The position numbers and the translations under genes are program-made. From Octopus sinensis (taxonomy: Eukaryota), in contig NC_043012.1 of assembly GCF_006345805.1 (NCBI RefSeq), positions 55,676,001 to 55,740,000 of the forward strand: DNA of 64,000 nucleotides. Direction: 5' to 3'. The notes under the pieces are model-generated. The model saw only the letters and a list, made by a program, of their open reading frames with translations, was not told where the DNA came from and ran no database searches. Positions 16,001 to 58,111 of the stretch are shown one piece after another. Numbering within the stretch: position 1 is the stretch's first letter; each line of letters opens with the position of its first letter.

Positions 16001-19000
16001 TTAGTAGGTTGAGTAACCATCTAGAACTGTAGTTTCCATCCTTTTTAATATCCAGACCAGGTCCAAAATTTGGATTTTATTTAGAGGTCTGCACCAAAAA
16101 CAGGTCAAAAAAAAAATTTGTATAGAGAAGACCTTCAAGGGTCACATGTGGCCCTGAGAGGCATGGTCGAGAACCGCTGATCCAAAGGGTCCCTCTTTGG
16201 CTCATTTCCCTAATACACAGCTAGTAACCAGCATAACGTACGAACAGTAAAGCTGATTGAGAACAATAAGGAACTGCTATGAAGAGAAATTTTTGAGCCA
16301 TTTCCAACATTTCAAAGCATTTAACAACTGTATGTATTGAATTAGTGTTGGGTTAAGGATCTTAGCTAGATATCATTGCATCAAGATAAGAACCAGATGT
16401 GACTTACTACACTTGATAAGACCTGTCAAGCTAAGTAAGATCGCTGCCTCCCACACAGGCTTGTCCCTTCAGGTGGTGGTGCCACTTAGAAAGCACCTGT
16501 GCTGGTGTTGCATAAACACACCCATGACTGTGACACATAAAAAGCACCCAGCATACTTAAGTGGTCGGCATTAGGAAGGGAATCAAGCTATAGAAACCAT
16601 GCCAAAACAGACATGGAACCTGAACAGCCCTTCAGCTGGTCACCCCACTGTCAAACCGTCCAACCCATGCCAGCATGGAAAAAAAGATGTTAAATGAGGA
16701 AAATGTCTCACCTTGAGAGGATCAAAGTCCTTAGTAGCTGGTTGAATCTGGGCCATATATGGAGATTTAGGAATATCTTCTTCATTACAATGAATGTGGA
16801 CTGCATATTCTCCTGGGGCTGTTGGCCAATAAGTGATATCAGCTGTTCCATCACCATTATCTTTGCAGTCAATTTTGGCCTGGGAAGGACCTTCAATTGA
16901 AAAACCTGTCCAAAACAAATATAAAAGGCTTCAGTACTTGGGTTTAATTGAACAGAGTACATTATATGAACCCTTATCTGAGAAATAAATGCATACGCGT
17001 CTTCGTTAATTGCAATGTTAATGAGCTAATTATATATGCATATAGTGTTAGGAGTTAACATTGAGCTTGATTACCAACTTCAAAATGACAAAATTATTTT
17101 TTTTTTAATCTTTCAATTCTAACAAATAAGAAAATGAAATATGTCAAAATGCAAGAAGTTAAAGTGAAACCATCAAGAAATCAATTATGATTGGATTAAC
17201 AGTTCCAAAAAATGTTGTAAGCAACAGAAGAAAGACAATGTAATATAGCAAAAGAGGAAATCTAAGAGAATGACCAAAATATAGTAGCTCTAAAGGTTAT
17301 ATTTATTACAATATACCATCTGAAGAGGTCTAGCTGTACTCGAGACATTGTGACCTCAATTCAGCTAATAGACAGAATGGTCAATAACTTCACAATCCTA
17401 ATAGTTATGATGCTGTGTAACACAAGTGACTCATTTGTCTATATTGTGGGGCCTACTTGTCTCTTTGAAATCCAATACTATCACCAAACCTCCTTCAAGA
17501 TCTGACCCTCCTGGAAATCCCACCTACCCACTTACAACCCAATTTTTGCAGGCCTGTACAACCCCTTACTGCAGATCAACCAATTAAAAAGTTAGATCAT
17601 TACTTGCTCTATCTAGTTCGTTAATCAAAACTATTCTATTTACCATTTAATCAGTTTTAAAATGACATCAGTATTTGAGGGTCATCATCATCATCGTTTA
17701 ACGTCCGCTTTCCATGCTAGCATGGGTTGGACAATTTGACTGAGGACTGGCAAACCAGATGGCTGCACCAGGCTCCAGTCTTGATCTGGCAGAGATTCTA
17801 CAGCTGGATGCCCTTCCTAATGCCAACCACTCCGAGAGTGTAGTGGGTGCTTTTACGTGCCACCAGCATGAGGGCCAGTCAGGTGGTACTGGCAACGGCC
17901 ATGCTCAAATGGTGTTTTTTACGTGCCACCTGCACAGGAGCGAGTCCAGTGGCACTGGCAACGACCTCGAAAAAATTTATAGATCTATGGTAAGCTATAG
18001 TATTTGGTAAAAAAAACTGAACATGCTAGGATTTCTTTCCCTCATCTATCAAAATGTATTTTTTCTTGAGTAAAAATATAGTTGAGAGATATAATATTCT
18101 TATGAGCATTAATAAAAGCCACAAGTTAGAGTATTCAAGAGAGACAACTGTGCAAGTATGGACATGGGATGAAAATTGGAAAAGGGACAGGTGAGAAAGG
18201 ATTGTAAAGGAACCAGGTTAGGAGACAACTTTGGAGACACAGAAATTGTGGTCAAAGTTCCAGATTTTTAGGGCTTTCGAAAAAGAAAAAAAATGGTGTC
18301 ATACAAGTCATGACCCAATATATATTACAGAAATTTTTTGCAATATTACCAACCAATCCTACATAGAAAAGAAAAAATAAAAGGGCAAAAAAGAAAAGGG
18401 TAAGAAAAAAAAATGAGAATCATGCCAGAATAAAAAATTATAAAGAAATAAAAATTTCATGTACCTAATGCTCCTGTTTCGCCATGGGTTTCCACAACAA
18501 ATGTTGCTGGTTTGCCGACCATTCCGCCGTGCAAGCCAGGACCATATGCTATAATCTTAGACAACTTGAATGGACCGACTTCAACCTTGAATGGACTCTT
18601 GGGGATGTGTTGGCCACCAAAAGTGACATTGATAGTGTAAGTACCAGGCTGTTTTGGGGTGTAAACACACTCGTAAGTTGTTGGATCAAGTTTCTTAATA
18701 CTAACCGGTTCATTTGCATTGCCTGGTAAAAGAAAAATGAATCTAATATTTAGCTGACATTTTAAAATTAAAATAATGTTAAAAAGAATTAGCATGTAAT
18801 AAAGATAAGTGTTTAAAATAAAACAGATTCTAAAAAAGTTGCAATAGAAATTTTAAACATTACCAAAAACAAAATTGGCACAGTGCTTTGTGTTCTTGGG
18901 CAAAACACTTTATTTTACATTGTTCCAGTTTATTATGGAAATGAGTAACTTTGCAATGGACTGGCATCCTCTTCAGGCAAAACATGAAGATCTCAGTCAG

Positions 19001-22000
19001 CCAGTCATATAACATGGAAACAATAACTGGCCCTACGAGTCCTAGGACTTTAGTTACTCATGCTATAAAAATGAAATAACTAGCCCTACAGATCTTGGGG
19101 CTCTAGAGTAATTTTCAGAGGTTATTGATGAGGACCATCATCAGGATACCAAGACAAGTTATTGCCAATTCACAATTTTCCAAATACTAATTTGTTAGAG
19201 ACTAGCCACAGGTCAACCTTACTGGAGCAGTCAAGAATCCCAGTCATGAAGACATGATCATCTTGTCCTTTTCTCAGGCACAGCATATCTTGGACTACAT
19301 ATAATGTAGCCCTTTCAAGACATTAGGTTATAAGAGATTTGGTTGTTATTTCTAGCAGATTAAAGGACCAATTTTTTAAAATCTTCCAATTCATTAGTAC
19401 ATTTAAAAGATTACAGAAGTTTGATAATTAGGGTGTGAGGACTAGTGGTTAGGATGTAGGTTCAATTTCTGTATCAAGTAGCACTGTCTTTGAGGAAGGA
19501 ACTTCATTTAACATTGGTCCAGTATCCTCAGCTGATAATGAAGACCAGACAGGTCTTGGTCAAGCCCTCTCTCCCCTTGAGAATCTGTCCTAGCCATTCT
19601 GGCTTCCTGAAAACTTAAAATGATTTTAAAAAAACGAAAAGAAAAGAAAAAAAATTACCTGGTCCAGTGATAGTAACTTTCATATCTCCATCACCAGCTC
19701 CTTTAGTATATACCTTGAAATCAGCATTGTCTTTCACTCTAATACCTTTAGGTTGGATTCCACGACCAGTTGCATAACATTTCTTTGCATTTGATGCTAT
19801 TAAATTTAAGAAAGAAAAAATAACAGTTAAAATATATATTTCTTTTAATCATTTCTTCAATGTATCTTCAAAGGCAAAATTATTTTAGTTGCTGTTGGCA
19901 TTGTTACAAAAAGAAGGAAAAAAAAATAACTCACCAGTAGAAATAGTAACCGAAATAGGGGATCGTGGAATAGGTTGTCCACAAAAGACAATGCTAATTG
20001 TATGGACTCCAGGCACTTTAGGTGTATATTCTACATGGTAAGTACCATCAGGCTGACGTGTCATCTTGGGCTTGATAGCATTTTGATTACCAGAGGGATC
20101 TGTGATGACAACACCCACTGGACCTTCTCCAGCATCTATCAAAGAGGACAAAAGTTATTGAGATATAAGTACAATATTTTGTGATTGGATATATCTAAAT
20201 TTTCTTTTATTTCTAAAATATTTAAGAAAATTTCCAGTAAAATTTTTGAAGGAATATTTCCAAACAAAATTTAAAGAGGAAATTTCAATGAAAATGTTTG
20301 AAGTAAAATGTTTTGTAAAGATAGAAAAACAATTTGAAGGTGGCAAGGAAGAAAAAAAAACTTACCTTTCAGAGAAATGGTAAAGTGAGTCACTACGCTC
20401 ACAACATTTCCTGGTTCCAGACCAGGACCAGCTGCTTTGACCTTTGAGGGATCTCCAGCAGGAGCAGAAACTGCAACCGGAAACGGACTCTTAGGAATTT
20501 CCTTGCCTGAGTATTTGATGATTACCTTGTAACTCCCTTCAACTTTAGGAGTGTACGTACAAGTGTACGTGAGGTGTTTGTCTTGGTTGAAAACAACCTC
20601 ACACTGAAAAGAGGAAAAGAGGAACAATAAAACCATTAATCAGAACAAAAAAAATGCATAGTAAAAGGAAAAAAAAAAAACTTAATTTTAATCTTATGAA
20701 ATTAAATAACATTTTTAACTATTACTACTGATTTTCAATAATGTCCTTTTGATTTAAAAAATATAAGCATACAGACATGGCTGTGTGGTTAAGAGCTTTG
20801 CATCCCAATCCTGTAGCATCAGGTTCAATCACTCAGTGCATCCCCTTGACCAAGTGTCATTTATAGTGTCAAGTTAACCAAGTGAATGGATTTATGAATG
20901 GATTTGATAAACAGAAACCGAAAGAAGCTCATGTGTTTTCTTCATTATCACAATAGTTGTAAATGAGTTACTGTCATATGAGTGGTGTTTGTTTCCAATC
21001 TTTCATGTCCAGCCATGGGGAAAATAATACTCTACATGGAAACTGGTAGGGAGCAGTGATAGGAAGAATATTCAACCATAGAAAATTTGCCTCAATAGAC
21101 ATCACCTACACCATGCAAGCACAGAAAAGTTAGAATGTAGAGTTTGATTTTGTATGTATAAAAAAACAAATAATAATAATAATGGTTTCGAATTTTGGCA
21201 CAAGCCCAGCAGTTTTTGGGGGAAGGGCTAAATTGATTACATTGACCCTAGTACTGGGCTGGTACTTTTATTGATCCTGGAAAGTTGACTGCAGAATTTT
21301 AACTCTGAACGTAATGATGGATGAAATGCCACCAAGCATTTGGTTCAGAGTGCTGAGGATTCTGCCAGCTTGCCACCTTAATAATAGTAGTAATGATAAA
21401 TGTAATTGTAATAGTAAGTGTAACAGTAATAATAAGTGTAACAGTAATAATAATAGTATAACAGTAATAATAAAAAGTTCTACTCACTGGCTCCTTCTGA
21501 CCCTTGGGATTGAGGACAAGTGGTTCAAGAGTTCCTTGTCCAGCACTAAATGTCTCCACAGTAAACGACGTCTTGGCTCCTTTCGTGTTACCAGTAGGTT
21601 CGATACCAGGACCATAGGCACGCACCCGATTGGGGTTAAGACGAGGCCTAAGGGGAGCTTGAGGATTCAGTTTGCAGTTGGGGAACTGGGATAGATACGT
21701 CATCATACTCATTTCATCAATCTTCGGGTTGTTCATTTCTGCTGGTTTAATTAGCTGTAGATGAACAGAGAATAAACAAAACATGCGTGAAGATTTTTAC
21801 TGAAGATTTTATAGTATTACAAATCCTTTTTACACCAGAAAATTTACAATAATCTAAAATTTCAGAGATGCATTGTTCTGCACGTTGTTTGATCCGAGAC
21901 TGTGTTGAAACTGTAACAATTACTCCATGGAAAACACAGTTAAGAAAAAAAAAAAAAATTAAAAAAAAAAAAAAACCTAATTTCCTTTAAACATTGGTAT

Positions 22001-25000
22001 CAAAATTTTTGCTGCACTAACTGAGACCAGGTCATTGATGCAGTTCTACAGTTGCAGTTAGTGCAATGGAAATTTTGACACCAAAATAGTAAATGTTTAA
22101 GTTACCATTCTTTGGTCTGTTTCTGAATTATTATGTCTTCAAACACTGTAGTAATTTTAAAATTTTACACAATGTAAACCTCAAATTTCCCAATTCAAAA
22201 TTTTCAGAAATTCAAATCTGACCATACATATTGGTGTTTAAAATAACTGATTGGTAAGATGATAACTCCACAATGCTCTATTTTATTATGTAACTAGCAG
22301 TATCGCCCGGCATTGCTCAGGTTTGTAAGGGAAATAACTATAAAGCATTTTTAGAGAGTTATAGCCCAAAAATAGCAAAAAAAAATGGGGAAAAAATTAT
22401 GGTAAATTTTTTTTGAGAGTAAAAAAAAGGTCGAGTTGCGTCCCCTAGACAGTCTGTGGTTTGTGTTTCAGATTCTCGACCCCATGTTGAATTTATCGAT
22501 TTTTTTTCAGAACTGGGGGAACTTTTCAAAATTTTCGCTGCGTTAGTTTTGAATTATGACATTGGGCTATGTGTATGTCAAGTTTCATCAGAATCGGTTG
22601 AAAGCAGCCTTCTGACCCTTGGGATTGAGGACAAGTGGTTCAAGAGTTCCTTGTCCAGCACTAAATGTCTCCACAGTAAACGACGTCTTGGCTCCTTTCG
22701 TGTTACCAGTAGGTTCGATACCAGGACCATAGGAACGCACCCGATTGGGGTTAACGGGGCCTAAGGGGAGCTTGAGGATTCAGTTTGCGGTTGGGGAACT
22801 GGGATAGATACGTCATCATACTCATTTCATCAATCTTCGGGTTGTTCATTTCTTCTGGTTTAATTAGCTGTAGATGAACAGAGAATAAACAAAACATGCG
22901 TGAAGATTTTTACTGAAGATTTTATAGTATTACAAATCCTTTTTACACCAGAAAATTTACAATAATCTAAAATTTCAGAGATGCATTGTTCTGCACGTTG
23001 TTTGATCCGAGACTGTGTTGAAACTGTAACAATTACTCCATGGAAAACACAGTTAAGAAAAAAATTAAATTAAATTAAAAAAAAAAAAACCTAATTTCCC
23101 TTAAACATTTGGTATCAAAATTTTTGCTACACCAACTGAGGTCATTGATGCAGTTCTACATTTGCAGTTAGTGCAATGGAAATTTTGACACCAAAATAGT
23201 AAATGTTTAAGTTACCATTCTTTGGTCTGTTTCTGAATTATTATGATAATAATAATAATAATAATAATAATAATTGTGTAAAGTGCTCAGGTGCACTACA
23301 ACTCATCTAAAGTGTATATATAATCAGGTGTAGTTTCGGCGGATTTCGGAAAGCATGAGGGCCTTAAAGGATGCAGTGTCATGGCAGTCAACAACTGACG
23401 CAGGCAGTTTATTCCAAGTTTCAGCAACTCTGAGCGTGAAAAAATGTTTCCGAAAGTCATGGGAGCTGTGTTGTTTTCTGACTTTGTAGGCATGTCCACG
23501 TGTGTTAGACACATGGAGATCAAAAAGGTGTTCAGTGTTGTTGTTGGTGAGGTGGTTGATAACTTTGTGGGTGTTTACCAAGTCCGTCGCCAGATGCCGG
23601 AGCTTCAGTGAATCCATGCCCAGGGAAACAAGGCGCTCAGAATATGGTAGGTGTCTGATGGAGGGTATGCGTTTGGTTGCACGTCTCTGGACAGATTCCA
23701 GGAGGTCAATGTTCTGAGCAAGATAGGGGTTCCAAACTGATGATGTGAATTCCAAGTGTGGTCGTACCATAGCTGTATACAGTTTTAAATAGATGGCTGG
23801 AGAGCGGCTAACAAAAGTCTTGCTGAGTGATGCCAAGACACCCTCGGCCATAGAGATATGCTTTGTCCAACGCAAATCACTGCTGACAGTGATGCCTAGG
23901 TCACGCTCGCAAGAGGATTTCTTGATATTAGTGTTGTGGAGGGAGTATGTGGACGCAGGGTTTTTTCTCCCAAAATGCATGGTGGTACACTTGTCCACAG
24001 CCAGTTTCAGTTGCCAGTCTGTGATCCATTGCTGCATTGTGTCTAGGTCTGATTGCAGGAAAGAGTTGTAGACATCAGGATCTGTCCTCTTGATTTCAAG
24101 GTACAGCTTGATGTCGTCTGCATATTTCAATACTGTGGCATTCTTTAAATTGGCATCTATGTCATTAATGTATGCCACAAACAAGAGGGGACCAAGGACA
24201 GATCCCTGTGGTACACCCGATGACATCTCATATGGTGTAGAGTGCTGTCCTAGAACTGTGACTACCTCCTTTCGGCTGAGGATGAAGGATTTCAACCAGT
24301 TAAAAAGGTCATCCCCCACACCCATTGCAGAGAGTTTCACCATAAGCCTTTTGTGTGGCACAGAGTTGAAAGCCTTAGCAAAGTCAAGGTAGACAACATC
24401 CACCCATGAGCCACTGTCAGTGATCTGAGTAATGTCCTCAAGGAACTCGACAAGCTGATCACTGCAGCTGGAGTTATGTCTTCAACACTGTAGTAATTTT
24501 AAAATTTTACACAATGTAAACCTCAAATTTCCCAATTCAAAATTTTCAGAAATTCAAATCTGACCATATATATTGGTGTTTAAAATAACTGATTGGTAAG
24601 ATGATAACTCCACAATGCCCTATTTTATTATGTAATACATATCATATCAAAACACTTTTCACATTTCTCATAGTTTTTTCTTTCTTTTTTTTTTTTTTCT
24701 TTTTAAGTTTTATTTTTATTACATGGATCACTTTGCAGGTACAAAGTTCACAGCAGATACTTTCCTGTAATTTAAGAATGAGGTTTTTTTTTCTGCCTGC
24801 AAGAGATGAGCCACAAAAGCTGTTCACGTTTAAAACAATCCTCAGCTAATTAATATCCAGTCCAGTCCTGAGCAACACAGGCATTTGATCAAAGGTATTC
24901 TAATCATGACCAACACATCTTTTTTGTCTATTCAATGTAGCCTTCATTTTCGAAAAAGAAAAAAGTACGACTCATGACCTGGTTGTTATTTCTATCAAGT

Positions 25001-28000
25001 CAAGCAACCAGGCAGAAGCTCTCCTTTTGGTTTGTGCATTCTTCATTTTTATGTATTTGTAACCCATGTGATTACTCCAGTAAGGTTTCACCAAGATATA
25101 CTTGTACAAATGCTACATGAGCAAGTCAATGGCCCACACAATAATACTGCTGCCAATGCGAGGCTATCACTTGGAGATTTTTGGTGGAATTTAAGCCAAT
25201 TTAGATCTTACACCCAGTATAGAACATGACCTGGTTTTGACCATTTCAAGAAACATCACCTTTGAATATTGCCTTGAATATGCTAACAGATACATATTTT
25301 TCCAAATAGTTATATAAGTAATGAGAGAAATGGGGAACAAAAACTTACTTGTGGCACATCTAACCATTTCTCTGCAGCTTCCATAGCTTCCTTAGCATTC
25401 TTCAGTTTGTTTTTGGGTGCCCAATCAGCCCAGTCGGGACACAGACCTAATTAAAAGAAAAAATATGAGGAAGTCAAATTAAATATGAAATAAAGCCTAA
25501 CAAACAAGAAACAATCGTTTAATATCAAATTCATAATTGTAGTTTAAAGAATTTTATGTCTAGTTCTGACTTCTTTCCGACTTCGTAGAAGAAATTAAAT
25601 CTGGGTGAAGTTTAAGATATATCACAAGAAGTTTTTTGCCAAAGGTTAACCTCATTTGAGTAAACCCATGGTCAAAGATGACCCAGCTGTGATCATTACA
25701 ATTTTGCTCATTTATTATAAAGATGATTGTGTTGAGGGAGATTTGGCTGTTATTTCGAGAAAATTAAATGAATGCATAGAGACTCCCTCACTGACTGGCT
25801 TGTATGTCAGTTAGCCAGAGGGTCCCCTTTGGAATTTTTTATGCCTACTTTAGTGAATATAAACGCTGGAATCAAGACCAAGCCATAAATATTGTACACC
25901 GACTTCTATACAACCATCACCCCGACAATTGTTACAATTCCTTGATATGCTTCCACTAAAGTTTGAATGCTGTTGAGTTATTCTTAATATTATAATTTTC
26001 TGCAGAAATTCAAATTTCCATTTATGGATGAAACTGGAAGGTTCCTTTAGAAACAGTAGGCAGAAGTTATGTGTGTACATGTATGAGTGCTTCTGCCTCC
26101 TAACAGAGTAAGCACACCTTGGACAAACTGCATTGGCTGTGATATTGCCCCATGCTTAGCTTTGGTAAGTTAGAAAAAAAAAAAAAAAAAATGTAACAGC
26201 TACCTAAAATATCTTTTTTTAAAAAATATTGTATTGTATTTTACCTGGTCCGCAAGCATCAACCAAAGCACCAATTGCTCGGCCATCGTTCCAATCAGTA
26301 GTGAAGTTATTAATTGGCAAATCTCCACATTTGCCTTGGATCCAGTTAAGAAGCCTTTGTTTAGGAGTGGGACCTCCAGCACCTGGTGCTGGTTCTTCCC
26401 CTTCCCACATAGGCATCGAGATGGAATAGTGAAGAATAAGAGTCCATATTAGACCCAAAATCAGCTTAAGCTTCTGATCAACAATATCACCACTGTCTGA
26501 AAAATTAAATAAATGATTCATATTTAGTATATATGTTAACAGTCAAATACCGGATTTTAAAAAAATTCAAAAATTTTCACAATGCTTTTATTAAAAACAT
26601 AATTCAAAATATAAACAATGACAAGTTTCCAAAATAGTCAGAAATAACTTATGGTTTTATAAACAAAGATTTAGAATAACTTAGCCAAAATGTCAGCCAC
26701 AGTCAAAGATCAAATTCCTCCAAGTTTTATTATGTAGTTCTGGGTCAATCATTGGATCAAGCCATGAAAAACAAATTTTATACAGTTATTTAAAAAGATT
26801 TTGTTAATTATTAGAAATAGTGGTATAAGCCACTTTTCTCAATTCTGCACCCTCCACTCAATCAAAGGGTTTTATCTTGCAGACTATGTGTCAACCACAT
26901 TAATCCTGAGCAACATGGAAAACACCCAGCACATTCTGTAAAGTGGTTGACCTTAGGAAGGGAATCCACCAGTAGAAACCATGCCAAAACAGACACAGGA
27001 ACCCAACAAAGTCCTCCAACCTATCAAACCATCCAATCAATGCCAGTATGGAATATGGACACTAAATGATAATGTAATAATTGTAGAAATTAGAAGTTTA
27101 GATTAGCTTTTGGATATATTTTTCAGACTTGTTTTACAGTTTTTTTTGTTATTTAATAATCAGCAAAAAAAAAAGTTGGGTTTTCTCCCCCCACAAAATA
27201 AAAAAAAAAAAAAAATCTTTGGTATTTGTTCCCAATACATATAAAAGATTTTTATATTCTTTGGAAGTCACAAATACTAAAAGTTTTATTAATGGATTTT
27301 AAATTATTTCGCTCAAATATCATGGAGAGTAAACATGTCATTACAAGGATAGAAAAATAAAAACCAACAGGGAATTAACAAACATTGACTACGACACCTT
27401 AATTATAGTGTAGAAGAATCCAAATATTCAGTTTTCAACTAAAACAACACAAATGAGTTCCCAAGACAATTTACTTAAGAAAAAAAATAAAAATAAAAAA
27501 GAATTGTAGTCCAAGACAAAAATAATCTACCAGAATCCTAATTTGGATGTCTGCAATTCTGATAACCAAAAGGAAGAACTTATGAAAAGACCTAAATGAA
27601 AAGTGGATTTGAGTCATTTTGTTATTCTTCATGCTTTCACAAACTACCATGACTCATATCAGGGACACCAGGCTGCTACTACTGTTGCTGCAGATTACTT
27701 TACATCAGTGGTTCTCAGCTGTGGTTCTCAGCTGGGGTCCATATGCCCCCCCCCCCCCAAAGAGTCCATGTAATAGTTTTGGTGGGTCCACAACAAAATA
27801 GTAAATTGGGGGTCCACAATGGTATTTTAAGGGTCCCTGAAAAAATTTTTGCCTAAGATGTATGTATTGGTATATATTGCAAGAAACAGCTAGGTTTCTT
27901 TAACATTTTACATAATTCAACCTCCACAAGTTAATGTGTGAAAACCAAAATAGAAATTTTGAAAGAAGTTTGGCTATGGGGGTCCACTAGAATAAAATAG

Positions 28001-31000
28001 TAATGAAATGGGTCCATAGATTAAAAAAAAATGGTTGAGAACTACAGCTTTACACCCTAAATGTCTGGAGTATCTAGTAATCTATTTTAGACAGCAGTCA
28101 AAAACTGAGTGGGCGAGCTGGCATGGTGTGTGTATGGTGGGAGAGATTTCATTAACCAAACCCATCTTTCGACATTTGTAGCCTTATGTCAATGATAGAA
28201 TTCATTACCATACAAAATATATTCCCATGACAATGTTTTTGATCCTAAAACCCCTTCACTTACACCACACTGTCATCAGAATTATAATTTTGGTGGAGGT
28301 TTTAGAGTGTCAGACAATGCTAAGCAGTAATTGTCTTGAATCTTTAAATTGCTGATTTCAAATCACTCTGAATCCAATTTTGCTTTTTATCCTTACAGGG
28401 TCAATGAAATTAAAGTACCAGTCAAGAACTGGGTTGATGGTATCAACTGACTCCCTTGCCTACATTTCAGGCCATGTGTCTCTCCTAAAGTCATCATTAC
28501 TATGGCAGTGAGCTGGTTGACCTGTTAGTGCAAAGAAAATACTTCCAGCTCTTTATATTCTAAGTTCAAATTCCTGCCACAATCATGGCCTTTTATCCTT
28601 TCAGGATTGATTAAAGTCAAGTACCAGTCAAGTACTGGGGGAGTCAATGAAATCAAATGACCCCCCTTAAAACTGCTGGCTGTGTGCCTATAATAGAAAC
28701 AATTATTACATAGCCCTATACCTAACTTAATATTTTGTTTACTTTTCTTAAAAAAAAAAAAAAAAAAATCCCCACATATATCTAGGATTTATTTCCAAAT
28801 TTGTAAAAAAAAAAAAAACTTAGAAAAACCATGTAATATGAATACATGTAGTAAATGCTTCTTTCTCCTATCATTGTTAAAATTCCCTAAACAAGTAGCA
28901 TATTTTGAAGAAATTGAGATTTGACAGATTACAGCAGTATTACTAAAACTGTAAACCGATCAGCTTTAGGAATTTTCTGTACTAAATGTACAACTTTCAG
29001 AGTAAGACTTATTTCTCTTCAGTGTAGAATTTCAAAACACTAAGTATTCTTGTTTGGAATTCTTCAATTATCAACAATTATCAACAAATGGCTATGCTCT
29101 ATGGATAATCTACTATAATAAAAGAGGTTAAACTGTTACTACTTATGCAAAGTGGCAGAATTCTAATATATGATTTTTGATTTAAGCACAAGAGCAGCAA
29201 TTTTGAGGTGGGTGGAGAAGTTAATACCATTGATTGCAGCAGGAGACTGGTCAATCTTGGAAAGATGAGAGGTAAAGCTGACCTTGACAAGAATTGGACT
29301 CAAAGTGGGACATAGTGAATAATGTCCAACATATGCACAAATAGAATTACTGTGATTGGAATGTCTTTGATTAAGATCTGTTGAATCCAGATTCATCTGG
29401 AGTTAAACACCACAACTGACAACAAGTATCAGAAGTTTTAAGAATTTATTTTTTGAAACCTTAGTGTTGCTGCTATTTCTTCACGTGTCAATAACTGATA
29501 AGATAGAGGACTGAAAAACACTGATGTATGGAATGTATAAATAGAAACAGAGGGAATATTTTTGCAAAATCCATATAGCGCTCCCTACTTCACCAGAAAA
29601 GAAAAAATAAAATAAAGCTCTATATCACAATGCACCAACATGGGTCACAACCTACTTGTTACAAAAAATATTACATATTAGAAATAAATTAACTGCTGTG
29701 ATTTTCAATATAAATTGATATGAGAAAAACATGATTATAGCCCTTCTCCACCTTGATGAGATTAGGTGGCGAGCTGGCAGAAACGTTAGCATGCCGGGCG
29801 AAATGCTTAGTGATATTTCGTCGGGCGCTGCATTCTGAGTTCAAATTCCGAAGTTGATTTTGCCTTTCATCCTTTCGGGGTCAATTAAATAAGTACCAGT
29901 TACACACTGGGGTCAATATAATCGACTTAATCTGTTTGTCTGTCCTTGTTTGTCCCCTCAGTGTGTAGCCCCTTGTGGGTAGTAAAAAAATAAGAAATAT
30001 GTATCATTTGAAGAGCAACTATTTTTCTTTTTTTTTAAAGAAAATCACAAAGAAAGAAAGAAAAAAGAAAAATCAGTAGTTTCACTTCCTACTTCCTTAT
30101 GTTATCAGGTTGAAAGTCTGACCTGATGACTTCATTGACAAATGAACTGCTATGTGTCCCTTCATGGGAAAATGCAAAATTAATTTCCTCCACCGTTTTC
30201 CTTCAGTTTTTTTTTTCTCTCCCTGCCACCCCCCACACAAGATACCATCTTGGTATGATTTAGACAAGTTCACCACACCTGTCTTGGCACCAGAATGCAT
30301 AGAAATAGAGAAAATACAACAAAGCATTTCGTTCCATGCCCTAACAAGTTCACTGTCCTGAACAGGTTATTTTATTTTATCAAAATATTTTATCTGATGT
30401 ATCATAACGAATGTAAATTGTTGATGGGCCAGTTACTGCAGTATTTATATCAAGACAACTACTGGAGTAATAGCCTATCATGAGTATGTATACATTAAGT
30501 ATGATACGTAAGTAGCTATTTTAAATATTGCCTCAATTGTATATACTGAATTATCAGTTCATTGATCCCCACCACCCTGCCTCATAAGGATGAGAAGTGA
30601 TATTGGTTTAATCAGAATTTGAACTATAATATAAAGAGTTGGAACAAATACTGCAAAGTATTTGCTCCGACACTAAAAAGTTTGCCACTTCCAACAAACA
30701 TTTTCTCTTGGAAATCACAAACTATAACAATAGAAAAATAAAAAAATTTTACCTCTGTTTTAACCCTTTCATTACTGTATTTATTTTGAGATGCTCTGTT
30801 TCTTTCAATTATTTTAGATAAAACAAAGAATTTATGAAAATAACTTAGTTATCATTCAGCTAGTGTTAGGAACATAAATTGTGACTAAGGTTTGGTGGAA
30901 GATTTTAATTCAAACCTTATGAAAACAAGACATTTGTACTCAGATCCAGAGCCGGTTTCAGCCGGGTTGGTAACGAAAGGGTTAATTAACAGTCACTCTT

Positions 31001-34000: not shown

Positions 34001-34892
34001 GAGTAAAAAGTGAACAGAAGAAAGAGAGAGAGAGAGAGAGATATAGAAAGTAGAGAAAAAAGAAAAGAAAAAAGAAAACCAACAAGAAACAAAAATAGTT
34101 CAGATACAAACTTAGTCTGCTGCTAGCTTAGGTTTTATTTATTCTGCCCACCCTGAGTCTCACCCCTGGCAGAAATTCCATATAAGGTAAGATTTCATCT
34201 GTCCAGTGTTAAGAAAGCAAAACTTTGCACAGTATTATCCTTAGGTGGTAGTAGCAGCAGAAGGAATTTGATATAGGGGATGAGTTATAAAGTAGTTGGG
34301 GTGGGGGTTTGGGGGTGCCGGTGACCGGGCAGTGGATTAGATATGAACAGTTTAAGTCCTGTTTTAGATCAATTTTGACAAGGAATGTACACAGAGGAAA
34401 GGAAATATAACTAAAATAAATAAAAATCAATTGCATGAAGTCCACTCCTATTTAAAAGACAGCGGAAAGGAAATAAAATTTTATTTGCAAAGAAAAAAAA
34501 ACAAAAAAAAAACACGAAAATTAAAAATAAATAAACCAACAACCCACCTTGATATTTAATTAATATAAGTATAATTGCTTAATATTAGCTAATATTATAA
34601 TATAGTGGGTGGTAATATAAGAAAAAAAAGTATTTTGATATCTGTTCTAGCAATTGTGGAAGTATAAAGCATGACTGGTTAACTACAATTTGATAATATA
34701 AAGAGATATGTGTAAGTTTAAGAAAGGTGTACGTATGTATACACTCTGAATGCACTGAAATGAACCCAAACACAATGTAAGAGGTTGTGCTTGAGCCATG
34801 GATGATGAATTAGCAGTTTTTCAAGCTTTGATGTCAGAAACACAGCATTAGAAATGAAAAAGGCCAGGTTTATAAAGCCTACTAGTCTAAAT

Positions 34893-56698: not shown

Positions 56699-57312
56699 AA
56701 TGTAGACACTTGACATTAATTATTATTTGAAGGATACTAATAGTAATTTAGTAGCAGAGAAAGTGAGAGCGAGATAGAGTGAGAGGCGGGTGAGCAGACA
56801 TCAATAGAAAGGTCGGTGGTTGTCGACAAATTTTTCATTCCTAACACCGGCCAAACGATTAACAACCCCAAATGTTAAAAGAATAAGCATCTATGCTTCT
56901 TTTAAACACCTTTTCCGTCTAATGACAAACAGCTAAGGACGTGGAGTTCACACTTACCTATGTTCACAATACGGATTCCTTCATCTTCTTCCAGAAACTT
57001 CAAGACCCTAGTAACGTTTTCGAGCTTCTGTGTTCGGAAGTTCGGCTTCTTGTTGATAAATTTGAATTTTTTGCTAGAGAGCACTTCAACGAGAGCAATA
57101 AGCCTTAAACCATCCGATAAATCCGTTTCCAGATCCATTAGTTGCTTGCTGACCGTTTTCAGGTGCTCGTTGGCCCATCTTGTAAAAGTGTTCTTTTGAA
57201 TTAGCTTCCATTGCGCATCATCGGCAAGATCTCTCTCAGTAGCCGGCATGTCCTCGTCGTCCTCGTCGTAATCTTCGTCGTCGTCGTAATAAGCCTCACT
57301 TTGACTAGCCAT
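186..57312 (-). CDS. FLNA: Filamin (filamin-A/cheerio-like), 5' part: 18 coding exons, ABD (CH1+CH2) plus about 11 Ig-like filamin repeats; continues beyond left edge
   Basis: Joined exons translate to filamin hallmarks: [62 protein letters not shown], then repeats opening with [16 protein letters not shown] and closing with IPxSPF. All 17 internal introns are GT-AG with compatible phases; total 3959 nt. FLNA is used as the family label; this is an invertebrate homolog. Confidence 0.97.
1193..1366 (-). CDS. FLNA: Filamin coding exon 17 ([23 protein letters not shown]...VTDKF)
   Basis: Read manually. Acceptor TCTTTCAG, donor G|GTAAAA; 174 nt, phase 1-1. Confidence 0.91.
1866..2137 (+). mobile_element. 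SINE family D copy (another at about 11905-12097)
   Basis: TTCTTGAGCAAGACACTTTATT...GCTCCAGTTCAC...GGTCATTCATGAC shared with 11905-12097, whose head has TGGCTCATTGG (A-box-like). Confidence 0.7.
2274..2486 (-). CDS. FLNA: Filamin coding exon 16 (GLERGITNK...DKHIP)
   Basis: Acceptor TTTCCAG, donor G|GTAAGT; 213 nt, phase 1-1. Confidence 0.93.
2556..2862. mobile_element. hAT-type MITE (307 bp)
   Basis: TIRs CAGGCATGTCACAC / GTTTGATATGCCTG (12/14); 8-bp flanks CTATAAAC / CTATAAAT. Confidence 0.82.
2930..3235 (+). mobile_element. SINE family B copy
   Basis: GGTTCATTCCCACTGTGTGGCACCTTGGGCAAG...GAAACTGACAGAAGCCC...(GT)n...GCTCCAGCATGGCCACAGTCAAATGA. Confidence 0.75.
3643..3753 (-). CDS. FLNA: Filamin coding exon 15 (GPYAVDISY...KVKAYGP)
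   Basis: Acceptor ATTTTAG, donor G|GTAAGA; 111 nt, phase 1-1. Confidence 0.93.
3865..4022 (+). mobile_element. Family-C retroposon fragment
   Basis: GGCATTAGGAAGGGCATCCAGCTGTAG...CCAACCCATGCTAGCATGGAAAGCGGACGTTAAAC(GAT)n. Further diverged copies at about 1614-1790 (-), 4407-4790 (-), 16490-16697 (+), 26920-27075 (+), 31895-32040 (-), 45003-45180 (+), 45383-45483 (-). Confidence 0.8.
4508..4710 (-). mobile_element. tRNA-derived SINE family A, nested in a family-C repeat
   Basis: Reverse complement of head GGCG..GAGCTGGCAGAAACGTTAGC...GAGTTCAAATT (A/B-box-like); TTTCCT on both sides. Confidence 0.8.
5194..5367 (-). CDS. FLNA: Filamin coding exon 14 ([14 protein letters not shown]...YMPIEQ)
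   Basis: Acceptor TTTTTGTGCAG, donor G|GTAAAT; 174 nt, phase 1-1. Confidence 0.92.
6110..6230 (+). mobile_element. Penelope-like element terminal remnant with decayed minimal hammerhead motif
   Basis: CTTT-CTGTAGA-A-GAGC-GTAG-GCTC-AAAAC-GT-A-AAAG geometry at 6110-6145. Confidence 0.55.
6341..6753. repeat. Inverted repeat with arms of about 120 bp (6341-6460 / 6632-6753), Penelope pLTR-like
   Basis: Arms are reverse complements (CCTCAGCTGCATAAA / TTTATGCAGCTGAGG; ATCAAAATAAGCAAC / GTTGCTTATTTTGAT) around a spacer of about 170 bp. Confidence 0.85.
6865..7183. repeat. Compound minisatellite: six ATCTCTTTATACCTATCATTTTATT units separated by variable (TA)n
   Basis: Units begin near 6901, 6941, 6985, 7027, 7090 and 7143. 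Confidence 0.9.
10017..10586 (-). CDS. FLNA: Filamin coding exon 13 ([13 protein letters not shown]...YGPGVEKT)
   Basis: Acceptor TTGTTTAG, donor G|GTAAAC; 570 nt, phase 1-1. Confidence 0.92.
11169..11393 (-). CDS. FLNA: Filamin coding exon 12 (GDVAISLT...KVRVEGLEK)
   Basis: Acceptor AATTTAG, donor A|GTAAGT; 225 nt, phase 1-1. Confidence 0.92.
12836..12947 (-). CDS. FLNA: Filamin coding exon 11 ([37 protein letters not shown])
   Basis: Not in the ORF track; read manually. Acceptor TTCTTACAG, donor G|GTAAGA; 112 nt, phase 0-1. Confidence 0.91.
13106..13316 (+). mobile_element. SINE family A copy (diverged)
   Basis: GCTGGCAGAATCGTTAGC...GAGTTCAAATTCC...TTGCCTTTCATCCTTTC shared with other copies. 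Confidence 0.75.
15003..15260 (-). CDS. FLNA: Filamin coding exon 10 (VVAFGPG...IPKSPFR)
   Basis: Acceptor TTTTTTAG, donor AGA|GTAAGT; 258 nt, phase 0-0. Confidence 0.93.
16712..16905 (-). CDS. FLNA: Filamin coding exon 9 ([20 protein letters not shown]...DFDPLK)
   Basis: Acceptor GGACAG, donor AAG|GTGAGA; 194 nt, phase 1-0. Confidence 0.93.
17683..17968 (-). mobile_element. Family-C retroposon 3' end with (GAT)n tail
   Basis: (CAT)n-CGTTTAACGTCCGCTTTCCATGCTAGCATGGGTTGG...GGATGCCCTTCCTAA; near-identical inverted copy at 38574-38897; orientation inferred from the tail. Confidence 0.8.
18465..18722 (-). CDS. FLNA: Filamin coding exon 8 (GNANEPVS...GETGAL)
   Basis: Acceptor TTTTACCAG, donor G|GTACAT; 258 nt, phase 1-1. 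Confidence 0.92.
19659..19796 (-). CDS. FLNA: Filamin coding exon 7 ([46 protein letters not shown])
   Basis: Not in the ORF track; read manually. Acceptor TTAATAG, donor G|GTAATT; 138 nt, phase 1-1; repeat-3 signature GRGxQPKGxRV. Confidence 0.92.
19935..20135 (-). CDS. FLNA: Filamin coding exon 6 (DAGEGPVG...SPISVTIST)
   Basis: Acceptor TTTGATAG, donor G|GTGAGT; 201 nt, phase 1-1. Confidence 0.92.
20366..20603 (-). CDS. FLNA: Filamin coding exon 5 (CEVVFNQDK...HFTISLK)
   Basis: Acceptor TTTTCAG, donor G|GTAAGT; 238 nt; IPKSPF and [11 protein letters not shown] motifs. Confidence 0.93.
21488..21754 (-). CDS. FLNA: Filamin coding exon 4, functional copy (LIKPAEM...PKGQKEP; end of CH2 and start of repeat 1)
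   Basis: Acceptor CTACAG, donor CCA|GTGAGT; 267 nt, phase 0-0, open frame. Confidence 0.94.
22294..22607 (-). mobile_element. Non-autonomous Helitron, 3' end intact, 5' end truncated
   Basis: Minus strand ends CCTG-AGCAATGC-CGGG hairpin + 8 nt + CTAG followed by T; the empty site in copy B reads A|T (24635/24636); contains AACCGATTCTGATGAAACTTG, typical of short Helitron derivatives; no 5' TC seen. Confidence 0.72.
22608..22867 (-). pseudogene. Duplicated exon 4 (pseudo-exon): acceptor intact, donor lost, premature TAA at 22753-22751
   Basis: Near-identical to 21493-21754; substitutions A>E, C>R, A>S; loss of CT turns CGT CTT AAC into CGT TAA; last 5 nt and the donor are replaced by Helitron sequence. 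Confidence 0.9.
23246..24473 (-). mobile_element. 5'-truncated CR1/L2-group LINE with open RT C-terminal frame (about 24472 to 23324)
   Basis: RT motifs [54 protein letters not shown]; (ATT)n 3' tail; TTATG duplicated at 23241-23245 and 24474-24478. Confidence 0.93.
25349..25446 (-). CDS. FLNA: Filamin coding exon 3 ([33 protein letters not shown])
   Basis: Not in the ORF track; read manually. Acceptor TTTAATTAG, donor CAA|GTAAGT; 98 nt; matches CH2 GLCPDW...WLxxPQ. Confidence 0.93.
26245..26496 (-). CDS. FLNA: Filamin coding exon 2 ([18 protein letters not shown]...DACGP)
   Basis: Acceptor TTTTCAG, donor G|GTAAAA; 252 nt, phase 1-1; ABS motif [14 protein letters not shown]. Confidence 0.95.
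27706..28047. mobile_element. hAT (Charlie-like) MITE (342 bp)
   Basis: TIRs CAGTGGTTCTCAGC / GTTGAGAACTACAG (11/14); 8-bp flanks CTTTACAT / CTTTACAC. Confidence 0.8.
29764..29997 (+). mobile_element. SINE family A, full length
   Basis: Same head, core TTTGCCTTTCATCCTTTCGGGGTC and tail AGCCCCTTGTGGG...AATAAGAAA as 35188 and 38078. Confidence 0.85.
30764..30981. mobile_element. piggyBac-type MITE (218 bp)
   Basis: TTAA on both sides (30760-30763, 30982-30985); TIRs CCCTTTCATTAC / GTAACGAAAGGG (11/12). Confidence 0.85.
33540..34060. repeat. Polypurine minisatellite (unit about AGAAGAGAAAGAAAAGAGAGAG, 20-24 bp)
   Basis: No C or T between 33566 and 33936 (371 nt). Confidence 0.95.
34178..34187. 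promoter_or_regulatory. Perfect CArG box CCATATAAGG (candidate SRF site in the long intron)
   Basis: Matches CC(A/T)6GG; near-match CCATGTAAGG at 33262-33271; several such sites are expected by chance in this AT-rich window. Confidence 0.25.
35188..35422 (+). mobile_element. SINE family A, full length, nested in a family-B SINE (about 35000-35670)
   Basis: Family-B sequence resumes after the insertion; flanks GAAATTGAA / GAAACAGAA resemble a decayed TSD. Confidence 0.8.
36985..37160 (-). mobile_element. Possible L2/CR1 LINE 3' remnant
   Basis: Minus-strand translation gives PTLWNSF...FKRNISRM, resembling the LWNSLP...FK terminus of L2/CR1 ORF2; heavily decayed. Confidence 0.35.
38078..38302 (+). 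mobile_element. SINE family A, full length
   Basis: High similarity to 29764-29997 and 35188-35422. Confidence 0.85.
38574..38897 (+). mobile_element. Family-C retroposon 3' end with (GAT)n tail
   Basis: Reverse complement of 17683-17968. Confidence 0.8.
39711..39963. mobile_element. hAT-type MITE (253 bp) nested in a family-B SINE
   Basis: TIRs CTGCGCTGTGGAGTC / GATTCCACAGCCCTG (12/15); internal GGAGTC(A/G)GA repeats; decayed 8-bp flanks TCAATCCC / TCGACCAC. Confidence 0.7.
42166..42506 (+). mobile_element. SINE family B, near full length
   Basis: tRNA-like head GCTGTGTGGTAAG...GGTTCAGTCCC; tail AAACAAGTAAAAGAG. Confidence 0.82.
43005..43158. mobile_element. Possible degenerate hAT-like MITE
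   Basis: Ends CAGAGCTGTTTTAA and CTAAGATGGCCT resemble a CAGGGCCGTCTTAA-type inverted pair; TSD not established. Confidence 0.35.
49553..49700 (+). repeat. Interspersed repeat family G (GAGGGAGATTTGGCTGCTATTTCTAGCAG core)
   Basis: Diverged copies also at about 12570-12750, 19250-19390, 25670-25790, 56375-56515, 59965-60112 and, inverted, 15935-16030; class unknown. Confidence 0.6.
50500..51750 (-). mobile_element. Possible very old L1/Tx1-like LINE relic
   Basis: Non-simple, coding-like composition; broken frames give [10 protein letters not shown] and [12 protein letters not shown], reminiscent of Tx1-type ORF2 C-termini; no catalytic motif seen. Confidence 0.25.
53091..53490 (-). mobile_element. 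SINE family B, full length
   Basis: Reverse complement of the 42166-42506 type; CpGs largely intact. Confidence 0.85.
53681..54036 (-). mobile_element. SINE family B, full length, same orientation as 53091-53490
   Basis: Near-identical to 53091-53490. Confidence 0.85.
54706..54772. repeat. (CA)n microsatellite
   Basis: Direct reading; many shorter (CA)n/(TA)n tracts occur throughout. Confidence 0.9.
56958..57312 (-). CDS. FLNA: Filamin coding exon 1 (MASQSEAYY...GIRIVNI; CH1)
   Basis: ATG at 57312 with in-frame TAA five codons upstream; CH1 motifs; donor AG|GTAAGT (GT at 56957-56956), phase 1. Confidence 0.95.
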
Positions 57313-57724: not shown

Positions 57725-58111
57725 TTTACGATCTGAGTTCAAATTCCACACAGGTCAAGTTTACTTTTATTCGTTCGCGGGGAAGGGGTCAATAAAATAA
57801 AGTACCAGTCACGTACTCGGGTTGATGGTTTCGGCTACCCCACCCACTCAAATTTACGATCTGAGTTCAAATTCCACACAGGTCAAGTTTACTTTTATTC
57901 GTTCGCGGGGAAGGAGTCAATAAAATAAAGTACCAGTCACGTACTCGGGTTGATGGTTTCGGCTACCCCACCCACTCAAATTTACGATCTGAGTTCAAAT
58001 TCCACACAGGTCAAGTTTACTTTTATTCGTTCGCGGGGAAGGGGTCAATAAAATAAAGTACCAGTCACGTACTCGGGTTGATGGTTTCGGCTACCCCACC
58101 CACTCAAATTT
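57725..58111 (+). repeat. 3 x 128-bp tandem repeat inside a diverged family-A SINE
   Basis: Units start at 57725, 57853 and 57981; one visible difference (GGGGTC vs GGAGTC); each unit has GAGTTCAAATTCC. Confidence 0.93.

What the first reader, a model, noticed from the sequence alone, without database searches (positions are those of the whole stretch)
21493..24635. Duplicated exon 4 with a stop placed right after the actin-binding domain: candidate ABD-only filamin isoform or poison exon
Seen: the duplicate (22608-22867) lies upstream in the pre-mRNA, so it is the first acceptor met after exon 3. Its polypyrimidine tract and CTACAG acceptor match the real exon. A 2-nt loss (CGT CTT AAC to CGT TAA) ends the frame after LIKPEEM...QAPLRPR, just before Ig repeat 1. 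Exons 1-3 plus this exon give a 273-aa product comprising the complete CH1-CH2 domain with no rod or dimerisation domain. The donor is gone, so the exon could act as an alternative last exon; an AATAAA occurs on the minus strand at 22287-22282, just past the Helitron end. Established: isolated filamin ABDs bind F-actin without cross-linking. Inference: this is either a new short isoform, an NMD-coupled poison exon, or a silent decoy. AATAAA is common in AT-rich DNA, so it is weak support.
Basis: partly seen in the sequence, partly recalled or inferred. Interest (0 to 1): 0.78.

Follow-up and report, generated by a model that had tools for sequence, protein, structure and literature searches.

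The report
Broken tandem copy of filamin exon 4
An invertebrate filamin gene carries a young, partial tandem copy of exon 4 inside intron 3; the copy keeps the real exon's acceptor site but has lost its donor site and reading frame, so it is most likely a decaying pseudo-exon rather than a proven short isoform.

Summary
On the minus strand, about 0.8 kb (the 3' end of intron 3 plus the first 262 nt of the 267-nt filamin exon 4) is present twice in tandem. The copies are about 98.5% identical at aligned bases. They are separated by about 303-314 nt of foreign DNA.

The upstream copy (4B, 22867-22608):
- has the same acceptor region as the real exon;
- lacks the last 5 exon nt and the donor;
- has a 2-nt deletion that creates TAA at 22753-22751.

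Exons 1-3 plus 4B do read as 273 aa, a complete CH1-CH2 actin-binding domain. It ends at the same residue as the crystallised human FLNA construct 2WFN.

Nothing shows that the copy is used.
- Exon and intron have diverged equally (1.5%).
- Three of the four exonic changes alter the amino acid in the original frame, and one of them (Arg) occurs in 0 of 79 orthologues.
- None of 80 orthologous loci has a second copy.
- The cited AATAAA occurs at background frequency and has an identical paralogue upstream of 4B.
- About one in five random small deletions would place a stop just after the domain.
- A cryptic donor at 22740 would give a 127-nt stop-containing exon.

Best reading: a recent, lineage-specific pseudo-exon that is mostly skipped, with any use being non-productive. 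No expression data could be reached. The Helitron label is not confirmed.

The parts
56958..57312 (-). Filamin exon 1 coding part. ATG at 57312; donor TAG|GTAAGT. Encodes the N-terminus and most of CH1.
26245..26496 (-). Filamin exon 2 (end of CH1, linker, start of CH2). It follows a ~30-kb intron 1.
25349..25446 (-). Filamin exon 3. Ends in phase 0; donor CAA|GTAAGT (GT at 25348-25347).
24474..24643 (-). Copy B, first piece of the duplicated intron-3 segment. Certain identity starts at 24635.
23246..24473 (-). 5'-truncated non-LTR retrotransposon fragment, in the same sense as the gene. It has an RVT_1 domain, a 359-codon frame open to its own stop, and an (ATT)n tail. It is flanked by the target-site duplication CATAA (24478-24474 and 23245-23241). 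It is absent from copy A, so it inserted after the duplication.
22868..23245 (-). Copy B, second piece of the duplicated intron-3 segment, with the polypyrimidine tract and CTACAG acceptor. The last 197 nt are identical to copy A.
22608..22867 (-). Duplicate exon 4B. 260 nt, equivalent to the first 262 nt of exon 4A minus a 2-nt deletion. It lacks the last 5 exon nt and the donor.
22751..22753 (-). In-frame TAA created by the 2-nt deletion. It ends a 273-aa reading of exons 1-3 plus 4B.
22735..22743 (-). Cryptic donor candidate CGG|GTGCGT (GT at 22740-22739). It is the only GT scoring at least 2 bits between the 4B and 4A acceptors. Its use would give a 127-nt exon containing the stop. The same site exists inside exon 4A (GT at 21625-21624).
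   Evidence: (approximate generic 5' splice-site matrix)
22305..22607 (.). Foreign junction DNA (303 nt for certain, up to 314 nt) between the end of copy B and the start of copy A. No coding frame, no other copy in the window. On the gene strand it ends ...CTAG before T 22293.
21755..22304 (-). Copy A of the duplicated intron-3 segment, immediately upstream of the real exon 4. Contains AATAAA 22287-22282.
21488..21754 (-). Real exon 4 (4A). 267 nt, phase 0 at both ends; donor CCA|GTGAGT. Encodes the end of CH2 and the start of filamin repeat 1.

Best explanation
This is a recent, lineage-specific partial tandem duplication inside a filamin gene.

Origin (inferred). One non-homologous exchange or replication template switch copied the last ~550 nt of intron 3 and the first 262 nt of exon 4. 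About 303-314 nt of foreign DNA was trapped at the junction. The copy now sits upstream of the original, within what is now a 3.6-kb intron 3. Afterwards the copy acquired a 2-nt deletion, and a 5'-truncated non-LTR retrotransposon inserted into its intron part.

How it behaves (inferred). The copy keeps a full-strength 3' splice site but has no authentic 5' splice site, so it is poorly defined as an exon. It is most likely removed with intron 3 in most transcripts. When its acceptor is used, the likely outcomes are splicing from the cryptic donor at 22740 (a 127-nt exon carrying TAA) or retention of everything up to exon 4A. Both give a premature stop and decay of the transcript. On this reading it is a decaying pseudo-exon that costs the gene a little output, not a designed isoform.

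Shown here: the anatomy, the order of events, the frame, the domain content and the neutral-looking divergence. Inferred: the splicing behaviour.
For: - Anatomy and breakpoints.
- Two independent disabling lesions are present, loss of the donor and a frameshift.
- Substitution divergence is the same in the exon (4/260) and in the intron (8/531), both 1.5%.
- Three of the four exonic substitutions are non-synonymous in the original frame. If both copies were strongly constrained, synonymous changes should dominate.
- Arg at exon position 27 occurs in 0 of 79 orthologous exons, which have Ala or Cys with four single exceptions.
- None of 80 orthologous loci has a second copy of this exon part, and 40 of them have at least 1.2 kb of upstream flank.
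- The retrotransposon has an intact target-site duplication and is in one copy only, so the copies have separate histories on one DNA molecule.
- The one usable cryptic donor yields a stop-containing exon whose length is not a multiple of three.
- AATAAA is at background density, and an identical paralogue lies upstream of 4B.
- 21% of simulated 1-2-nt deletions end the product at residues 262-280.
- Established knowledge: loss of an authentic 5' splice site usually causes exon skipping or activation of a cryptic 5' site.
Against: - No transcript data could be reached, so the splicing outcome is pure inference.
- The acceptor region is perfectly preserved: 0 differences in 210 nt against 1.5% elsewhere, roughly P = 0.04 by chance. 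It is also the first acceptor the spliceosome meets.
- The frame upstream of the stop is intact.
- The stop falls on exactly the residue where the crystallised FLNA ABD construct ends.
- A 3' splice site followed about 580 nt later by AATAAA and a GU-rich stretch could define a terminal exon.
- With only 12 substitutions, the neutrality argument is weak.
Confidence: 0.62

Rival explanations
1. Poison exon in regular use. The 4B acceptor competes effectively with 4A. The cryptic donor at 22740, or retention down to 4A, puts the TAA into a sizeable share of transcripts. These are degraded by NMD, and this sets or regulates filamin dosage.
For: - The acceptor is identical to the real one and is met first.
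- The cryptic donor CGG|GTGCGT scores 5.4 bits, within the range of this gene's real donors (2.8-6.3), and it no longer has to compete with the authentic donor.
- The in-frame stop lies far upstream of many exon junctions.
- There is precedent for a stop-containing exon in a filamin gene: mouse and human Flna, repressed by PTBP1 (Zhang et al. 2016, as reviewed in PMC5816070).
Against: - The same cryptic site sits unused inside the real exon, since protein homology runs through it.
- There is no conservation in other species.
- No regulatory elements were identified, and a young neutral-looking copy is not expected to be a regulated device.
- The donor matrix was a generic one recalled from the literature.
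Confidence: 0.17
2. ABD-only filamin isoform. Exon 3 splices to 4B, the transcript is cleaved and polyadenylated after AATAAA 22287-22282, and a 273-aa CH1-CH2 protein is made. This protein binds F-actin without cross-linking it and could compete with full-length filamin.
For: - The 273-aa frame is open and has two CH stretches.
- It aligns end to end with the crystallised FLNA ABD constructs 2WFN and 6D8C, stopping at the same residue.
- An acceptor plus a downstream AATAAA with a GU-rich tail could define a terminal exon.
- A stop in a last exon escapes NMD (established knowledge).
- Short filamin-like gene models that end just after the ABD exist in sea-urchin RefSeq annotations.
Against: - AATAAA occurs at 1.57 per kb on this strand, so about one is expected by chance in this interval.
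- The same hexamer in identical context is ancestral intron sequence and also lies upstream of 4B, along with three more AATAAA in intron 3.
- The U1-type site at 22740 lies between the acceptor and the signal and would be expected to suppress cleavage (established knowledge of U1 telescripting; inference here).
- The pre-stop codons show 2 non-synonymous changes against 1 synonymous, including an unprecedented Arg.
- The stop position is not improbable by chance.
- No natural ABD-only filamin isoform was found in the literature search.
Confidence: 0.09
3. Assembly artefact. Two haplotypes of one region were laid down in tandem, and the living genome has a single exon 4.
For: The 1.5% substitution divergence, and an insertion present in only one copy, are also what two alleles of a heterozygous marine invertebrate would look like.
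Against: - There are no Ns or gaps.
- The copies are joined through ~303-314 nt of unique foreign DNA that matches nothing nearby. Real molecules must therefore carry both junctions: exon position 262 to foreign DNA, and foreign DNA to the intron.
- A simple allelic insertion cannot produce the second junction.
- Copy B carries two disabling lesions, which fits a redundant copy better than an allele of a single-copy exon.
- The window has no other such duplication.
Confidence: 0.07

Closest known systems
Tandem exon duplication as a source of alternative exons (mutually exclusive exon pairs; reviewed in PMC9013439 and PMC9741552)
   Same: An exon and its upstream intron sequence are duplicated head to tail inside the same gene, and the duplicate keeps a functional-looking acceptor.
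   Different: The known functional cases keep both splice sites and the reading frame, and most are ancient and conserved. Here the donor and the frame are lost, the copy is young (1.5% divergence), and it is absent from 80 related loci.
PTBP1-repressed stop-containing exon of mammalian Flna (Zhang et al. 2016, cited in PMC5816070)
   Same: A filamin gene with an intronic exon that carries a premature stop and would lower filamin output if included.
   Different: The mammalian exon is a regulated cassette exon with both splice sites. It is not a copy of a neighbouring exon and lies elsewhere in the gene. No inclusion or regulation has been shown here.
Recombinant filamin A/B actin-binding-domain constructs (PDB 2WFN, 3HOP, 3FER, 6D8C)
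   Same: The 273-aa reading covers the same CH1-CH2 unit and ends at the residue matching the last residue (278) of 2WFN. Such fragments fold and bind F-actin.
   Different: These are laboratory truncations, not natural isoforms. They show that the product could fold, not that it is made.
Helitron carrying a captured gene fragment
   Same: On the gene strand the foreign junction DNA ends CTAG and is followed by T. The paralogous empty site reads A|T. The gene fragment lies directly 5' of that end, where Helitrons carry captured fragments.
   Different: There is no subterminal hairpin, no 5' end, no other copy in the window or the related loci, and no Rep/helicase. The fragment lies at its own source locus, which fits a local rearrangement better than capture followed by transposition.
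Pseudo-exons and decoy exons in introns
   Same: An intronic sequence with one good splice site and a stop, expected to be skipped or to give non-productive transcripts.
   Different: Most described pseudo-exons arise from random intron sequence or transposable elements. This one is a recognisable recent copy of the adjacent coding exon.

Membership tests
Filamin gene (host gene) | N-terminal tandem CH1-CH2 actin-binding domain followed by filamin/ABP280 Ig-like repeats | tested here: met
   Pfam CH matches in two stretches (E 1e-41), and the Filamin repeat starts at residue 275. PDB filamin A/B ABDs match at E 1e-100 to 1e-105. Many repeat exons lie downstream in the window.
Tandem exon duplication | Two homologous copies of an exon, adjacent, in the same orientation, within one gene | tested here: met
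   22608-22867 matches 21493-21754, with 4 substitutions and one 2-nt deletion. Both are on the minus strand, 1113 nt apart.
Mutually exclusive exon pair | Both copies have an acceptor and a donor and preserve the reading frame | tested here: not met
   4B lacks the last 5 nt and the donor, and carries a frameshift and TAA.
Poison (NMD-coupled) exon | Usable 3' splice site | tested here: met
   The acceptor, polypyrimidine tract and 197 nt upstream are identical to those of the constitutive exon. This is sequence evidence only.
Poison (NMD-coupled) exon | Usable 5' splice site | tested here: inconclusive
   The authentic donor is absent. One cryptic candidate exists at 22740 (5.4 bits, 99.4th percentile of GTs in the gene). 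The same site is not used in exon 4A.
Poison (NMD-coupled) exon | In-frame premature stop upstream of later exon junctions | tested here: met
   TAA at 22753-22751; many filamin exons follow.
Poison (NMD-coupled) exon | Observed inclusion, with transcripts stabilised when NMD is blocked | not testable with these tools
   No transcript data were available. No same-species sequence was found in the protein, contig or metagenome collections.
Poison (NMD-coupled) exon | Evolutionary conservation (typical of regulated poison exons) | tested here: not met
   0 of 80 orthologous loci have a second copy, and 40 of them have at least 1.2 kb of upstream flank.
Alternative last exon giving a short isoform | Polyadenylation signal downstream of the stop, beyond chance expectation | tested here: inconclusive
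   There is one AATAAA (22287) in the 1 kb after the stop, and about 1.6 are expected from the gene-wide density. An identical paralogue lies at 24629.
Alternative last exon giving a short isoform | Mapped 3' ends or a detected protein product | not testable with these tools
   No data were available.
Helitron (junction DNA) | 3' terminus CTRR inserted before a host T, at an A|T site | tested here: met
   ...CTGCTAG|TTACAT at 22294/22293; the paralogous site in copy B reads GTA|TTACAT. A four-base match is weak evidence.
Helitron (junction DNA) | GC-rich hairpin about 10-20 nt before the 3' terminus | tested here: not met
   The DNA fold of the last 61 nt gives -1.5 kcal/mol with z = +1.3; 187 of 200 shuffles fold at least as well.
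Helitron (junction DNA) | 5' TC terminus, Rep/helicase or other family copies | tested here: inconclusive
   The 5' side is cut off at the exon junction. No open frame exists, and no other copy was found in the window or in the 80 loci. The rest of the source genome could not be searched.
Non-LTR retrotransposon insertion (23246-24473) | Reverse-transcriptase domain, 5' truncation, 3' tail and target-site duplication | tested here: met
   RVT_1 at E 7e-27, starting at profile position 49. A 359-codon frame is open to its own stop. An (ATT)n tail and the CATAA duplication are present. The clade was not determined.

The most novel reading that the evidence does not exclude
The partial duplication plus frameshift has created a lineage-specific, naturally expressed ABD-only filamin. 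It would be 273 aa and end at the same residue as the classic crystallised construct. It would be made from an alternative last exon and would act as a non-cross-linking F-actin binder, or as a competitor that tunes filamin cross-linking. This would be a one-step birth of a dominant modulator from an exon duplication.
Probability: 0.08. Interest if true: 0.6.

Novelty: new member of a known kind. Interest (0 to 1): 0.27.

Why it matters
As it stands, this is a clean, datable snapshot of the earliest stage of tandem exon duplication. One exchange event puts a second full-strength acceptor in front of a constitutive exon of an essential cytoskeletal gene. It is useful for two things.

First, as an annotation warning. 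Gene predictors may pick 4B and truncate the filamin model to an ABD-only fragment, and the databases already contain many such short filamin models.

Second, as a natural test of how a spliceosome chooses between two identical acceptors when only the second is followed by a real donor.

It would matter more if the copy proved to be used. That would give a natural ABD-only filamin or a new dosage-controlling exon. Nothing found here argues for either.

Tried and rejected
Attempts to find expression or same-species evidence:
1. A homology search with the 273-aa product found nothing above 78% identity (Capitella, Candidula) and no protein ending ...LRPR.
3. Exact look-ups of two window ORFs, the RT frame and the frame containing exon 4A, found nothing.
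4. A metagenome scan with the exon-4 peptide gave 80 orthologous loci, but none from the same species (at most 84% identity). These loci were used only to polarise the amino-acid changes and to test conservation.

Attempts to identify the junction DNA:
5. A sensitive BLAST against the window and all loci found no copy.
6. There is no open frame, no tRNA-like head and no Rfam match.
7. There is no terminal hairpin, so 'Helitron' is left as an unconfirmed lead.

Readings considered and rejected:
8. A mutually exclusive exon pair is rejected because the donor and the frame are lost.
9. Recursive splicing is rejected because no GT follows the acceptor (CAG|CTAATT).
10. The idea that 4B is the real exon is rejected because only 4A is in frame and has a donor.
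11. An assembly artefact is judged unlikely because of the unique junction DNA and the two junctions it requires.

Other:
12. A literature search for natural ABD-only filamin isoforms found none.
Every boundary was then read from the sequence itself.

Full report
**What the window is.** The sequence is eukaryotic, about 36% G+C, with no N. Its minus strand carries the 5' part of a filamin gene. Each boundary was then read from the sequence.
- Exon 1 coding part is 57312-56958.
- A ~30-kb intron follows.
- Exon 2 is 26496-26245.
- Exon 3 is 25446-25349 and ends in phase 0.
- Exon 4 is 21754-21488 (267 nt, phase 0 at both ends).
- Many filamin-repeat exons follow, down to the start of the window.

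Pfam finds two CH stretches and, from residue 275, the first filamin repeat. The closest proteins in the large collection are from Capitella (76%) and a land snail (78%, partial), so the source is probably a lophotrochozoan. The species itself is not represented.

**The observation.** A self-comparison shows two homologous blocks: 22608-23245 with 21493-22135, and 24474-24643 with 22131-22304. Both are 96.6% identical with gaps counted. The gapped alignment resolves the anatomy in the direction of transcription:
- exon 3;
- 713 nt of unique intron;
- copy B of the distal intron-3 segment, starting at T 24635;
- a 1228-nt insertion (24473-23246);
- the rest of copy B, including the acceptor and 260 nt of exon (22867-22608);
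- 303-314 nt of unrelated DNA (22607 to about 22305/22294);
- copy A of the same intron segment, starting at T 22293;
- the real exon 4.

The 2-nt deletion turns CGT CTT AAC into CGT TAA, with the stop at 22753-22751. Exons 1-3 plus 4B read as 273 aa. Homology stops after ...CAGAAGG, 5 exon nt before the donor, so the authentic donor is missing. There is one more difference, at 22734. AATAAA is at 22287-22282.

**Domain content of the hypothetical product.** The 273-aa reading has both CH stretches. It aligns over residues 13-273 with residues 19-278 of the 278-residue human FLNA ABD chain 2WFN. The two sequences end at the same position (...APLRPR against ...APLRPK). It also matches the F-actin-bound FLNA ABD entry 6D8C and the FLNB ABD entries. 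The product would therefore be a complete, foldable actin-binding domain. I tested how surprising this is. Among all 523 possible 1- or 2-nt deletions in this exon, 21% give a product ending between residues 262 and 280, and 2.3% give exactly 273. The clean stop position is therefore not strong evidence of design.

**Order of events.** The 1228-nt insertion encodes a reverse transcriptase: RVT_1 at E 7e-27, entering the profile at position 49, which indicates 5' truncation. It has a 359-codon frame open to its own stop. It ends in an (ATT)n tail and is flanked by a perfect 5-nt duplication, CATAA (24478-24474 and 23245-23241), which copy A has only once. It is a non-LTR retrotransposon that inserted into copy B after the duplication, and the open frame suggests this happened recently. 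Its C-terminal motif resembles CR1-type elements from memory, but this was not tested.

**Divergence and selection.** Excluding gaps, the copies differ at 8 of 531 intron positions and 4 of 260 exon positions, 1.5% in both. Three of the four exonic substitutions change the amino acid in the original frame (A>E, C>R, A>S) and one is silent. If both copies were under filamin-like constraint, silent changes should dominate. With an assumed dN/dS of 0.1, three or more replacements out of four has a probability of about 0.04 (my arithmetic). In the orthologous exons from the 80 metagenome-derived loci, exon position 5 is variable (V, E, D, N, A). Position 27 is Ala or Cys in 75 of the 79 orthologues that cover it (four single exceptions: T, S, F, G) and is never Arg, so the Arg of 4B is a derived and unprecedented change. 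None of the 80 loci has a second copy of this exon part, and 40 of them extend at least 1.2 kb upstream. The copy is therefore young, specific to this lineage and evolving as neutral DNA, as far as 12 substitutions can show. One observation points the other way. There is no difference in the 197 nt before the acceptor or in the first 13 exon nt (P about 0.04). This could be chance, gene conversion or constraint on the acceptor region.

**Splicing and 3'-end signals.** The two acceptors are identical. I scored every GT between the 4B and 4A acceptors with a generic 5' splice-site matrix. The frequencies were recalled from the literature, so the scores are approximate. Only one site reaches 2 bits: CGG|GTGCGT at 22740. 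It scores 5.4 bits, at the 99.4th percentile of all 3169 GTs in the gene. The four verified donors of this gene score 2.8-6.3. Its use would make a 127-nt exon that contains the TAA and breaks the frame, which is a poison exon. The same site lies inside the real exon 4A, where protein homology runs through it, so it is not normally the chosen donor.

AATAAA occurs 90 times in the 57 kb of sense strand (1.57 per kb). About one is therefore expected by chance in the 1 kb between the stop and the 4A acceptor. Intron 3 has four more AATAAA upstream of 4B. The hexamer is thus ancestral intron sequence and not something gained with the duplicate. It remains true that the duplication placed a strong acceptor about 580 nt in front of one copy of it. 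That arrangement could define a terminal exon, so this route cannot be excluded.

**The junction DNA and the 'Helitron'.** The 303-314 nt between the copies has no other copy in the window or in the 80 related loci and no open frame. It has no tRNA-like part and no Rfam match. On the gene strand it ends CTAG before T 22293, and the paralogous site in copy B reads A|T, which is compatible with a Helitron 3' end. However, the last 61 nt fold no better than shuffled sequence (z = +1.3), and the 5' side is cut off at the exon. The label is unconfirmed.

If it is a Helitron, a neat origin is a single unequal non-homologous exchange between two chromosomes. One chromosome would carry the element at that A|T site, and the other would lack it. 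The exchange would join exon 4 position 262 of the empty chromosome to an internal point of the element. This reproduces the observed structure exactly, but it is inference. A tandem duplication with a templated insertion at the junction explains the structure equally well.

**Artefact?** The divergence level alone could be allelic. But the two copies are joined through unique DNA, so real molecules must contain both junctions, and the second junction (foreign DNA to intron) cannot come from a simple allelic insertion. There are no gaps, and no other duplication of this kind exists in the window. I put this rival at about 7%.

**Comparison with what is known.**
- Tandem exon duplication is a well-known source of mutually exclusive exons (PMC9013439). 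This copy fails that family's defining features, because it has neither a donor nor an intact frame.
- Mammalian Flna has a regulated stop-containing exon repressed by PTBP1 (Zhang et al. 2016 as reviewed in PMC5816070). That is a functional analogue of the poison-exon reading, but it is unrelated in origin and position.
- I found no report of a natural ABD-only filamin isoform.
- RefSeq does hold 257-272-aa 'filamin-A-like' models from three sea urchins that end just after the ABD.
- Several other short filamin models in the same list simply stop at an exon edge. This shows how easily predictors truncate this gene.

**Verdict.** The finding is accurate as a description and ordinary as biology. 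It is a recent partial tandem duplicate of exon 4 that has lost its donor and its frame. It is most likely skipped, or used only non-productively (0.62). Regular poison-exon use (0.17), a real ABD-only isoform (0.09) and an assembly artefact (0.07) remain open, because no transcript or read data for the source species could be reached.

Noticed in passing
window 57725-58111: Three head-to-tail copies of a 128-bp unit, 99% identical, about 400 bp upstream of the filamin start codon. The unit looks SINE-like from memory, but this was not tested.
   Followed up: no
window 21389-21473: An 18-bp minisatellite (4.6 copies) begins 15 nt after the exon 4A donor GT, just outside the duplicated segment.
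   Followed up: no
window 38641-38897, 17684-17945, 3867-4021 (also 29768-29997, 35192-35422, 38080-38301): Two families of short dispersed repeats (about 150-260 bp, 84-92% identical), in both orientations, lie within filamin introns. They are probably non-autonomous transposable elements.
   Followed up: no
proteins P0066, P0068, P0069 (Diadema setosum, D. antillarum, Lytechinus pictus): RefSeq 'filamin-A-like' models of 257-272 aa, 55-57% identical to this ABD, all end a few residues after the CH2 domain. They may represent a stand-alone ABD-only filamin paralogue in sea urchins, or they may be truncated models.
   Followed up: partly
loci L017-L077 (annelid-associated metagenome contigs): In most of these orthologues the match to exon 4 stops after ...RAYGPG (residue 50). 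This suggests an extra intron there. In this window and in L001-L004 the exon is undivided.
   Followed up: no
window 21755-21951 and 22868-23064: The 197 nt upstream of both acceptors, plus the first 13 exon nt, are identical, while the rest of the duplicate differs at 1.5%. This could be chance (P about 0.04), gene conversion or constraint.
   Followed up: partly
window 33542-34075: A 534-nt GA-rich array with a 22-nt period lies in intron 1. It accounts for the strong GC and AT skew of that stretch and for two spurious long ORFs.
   Followed up: no
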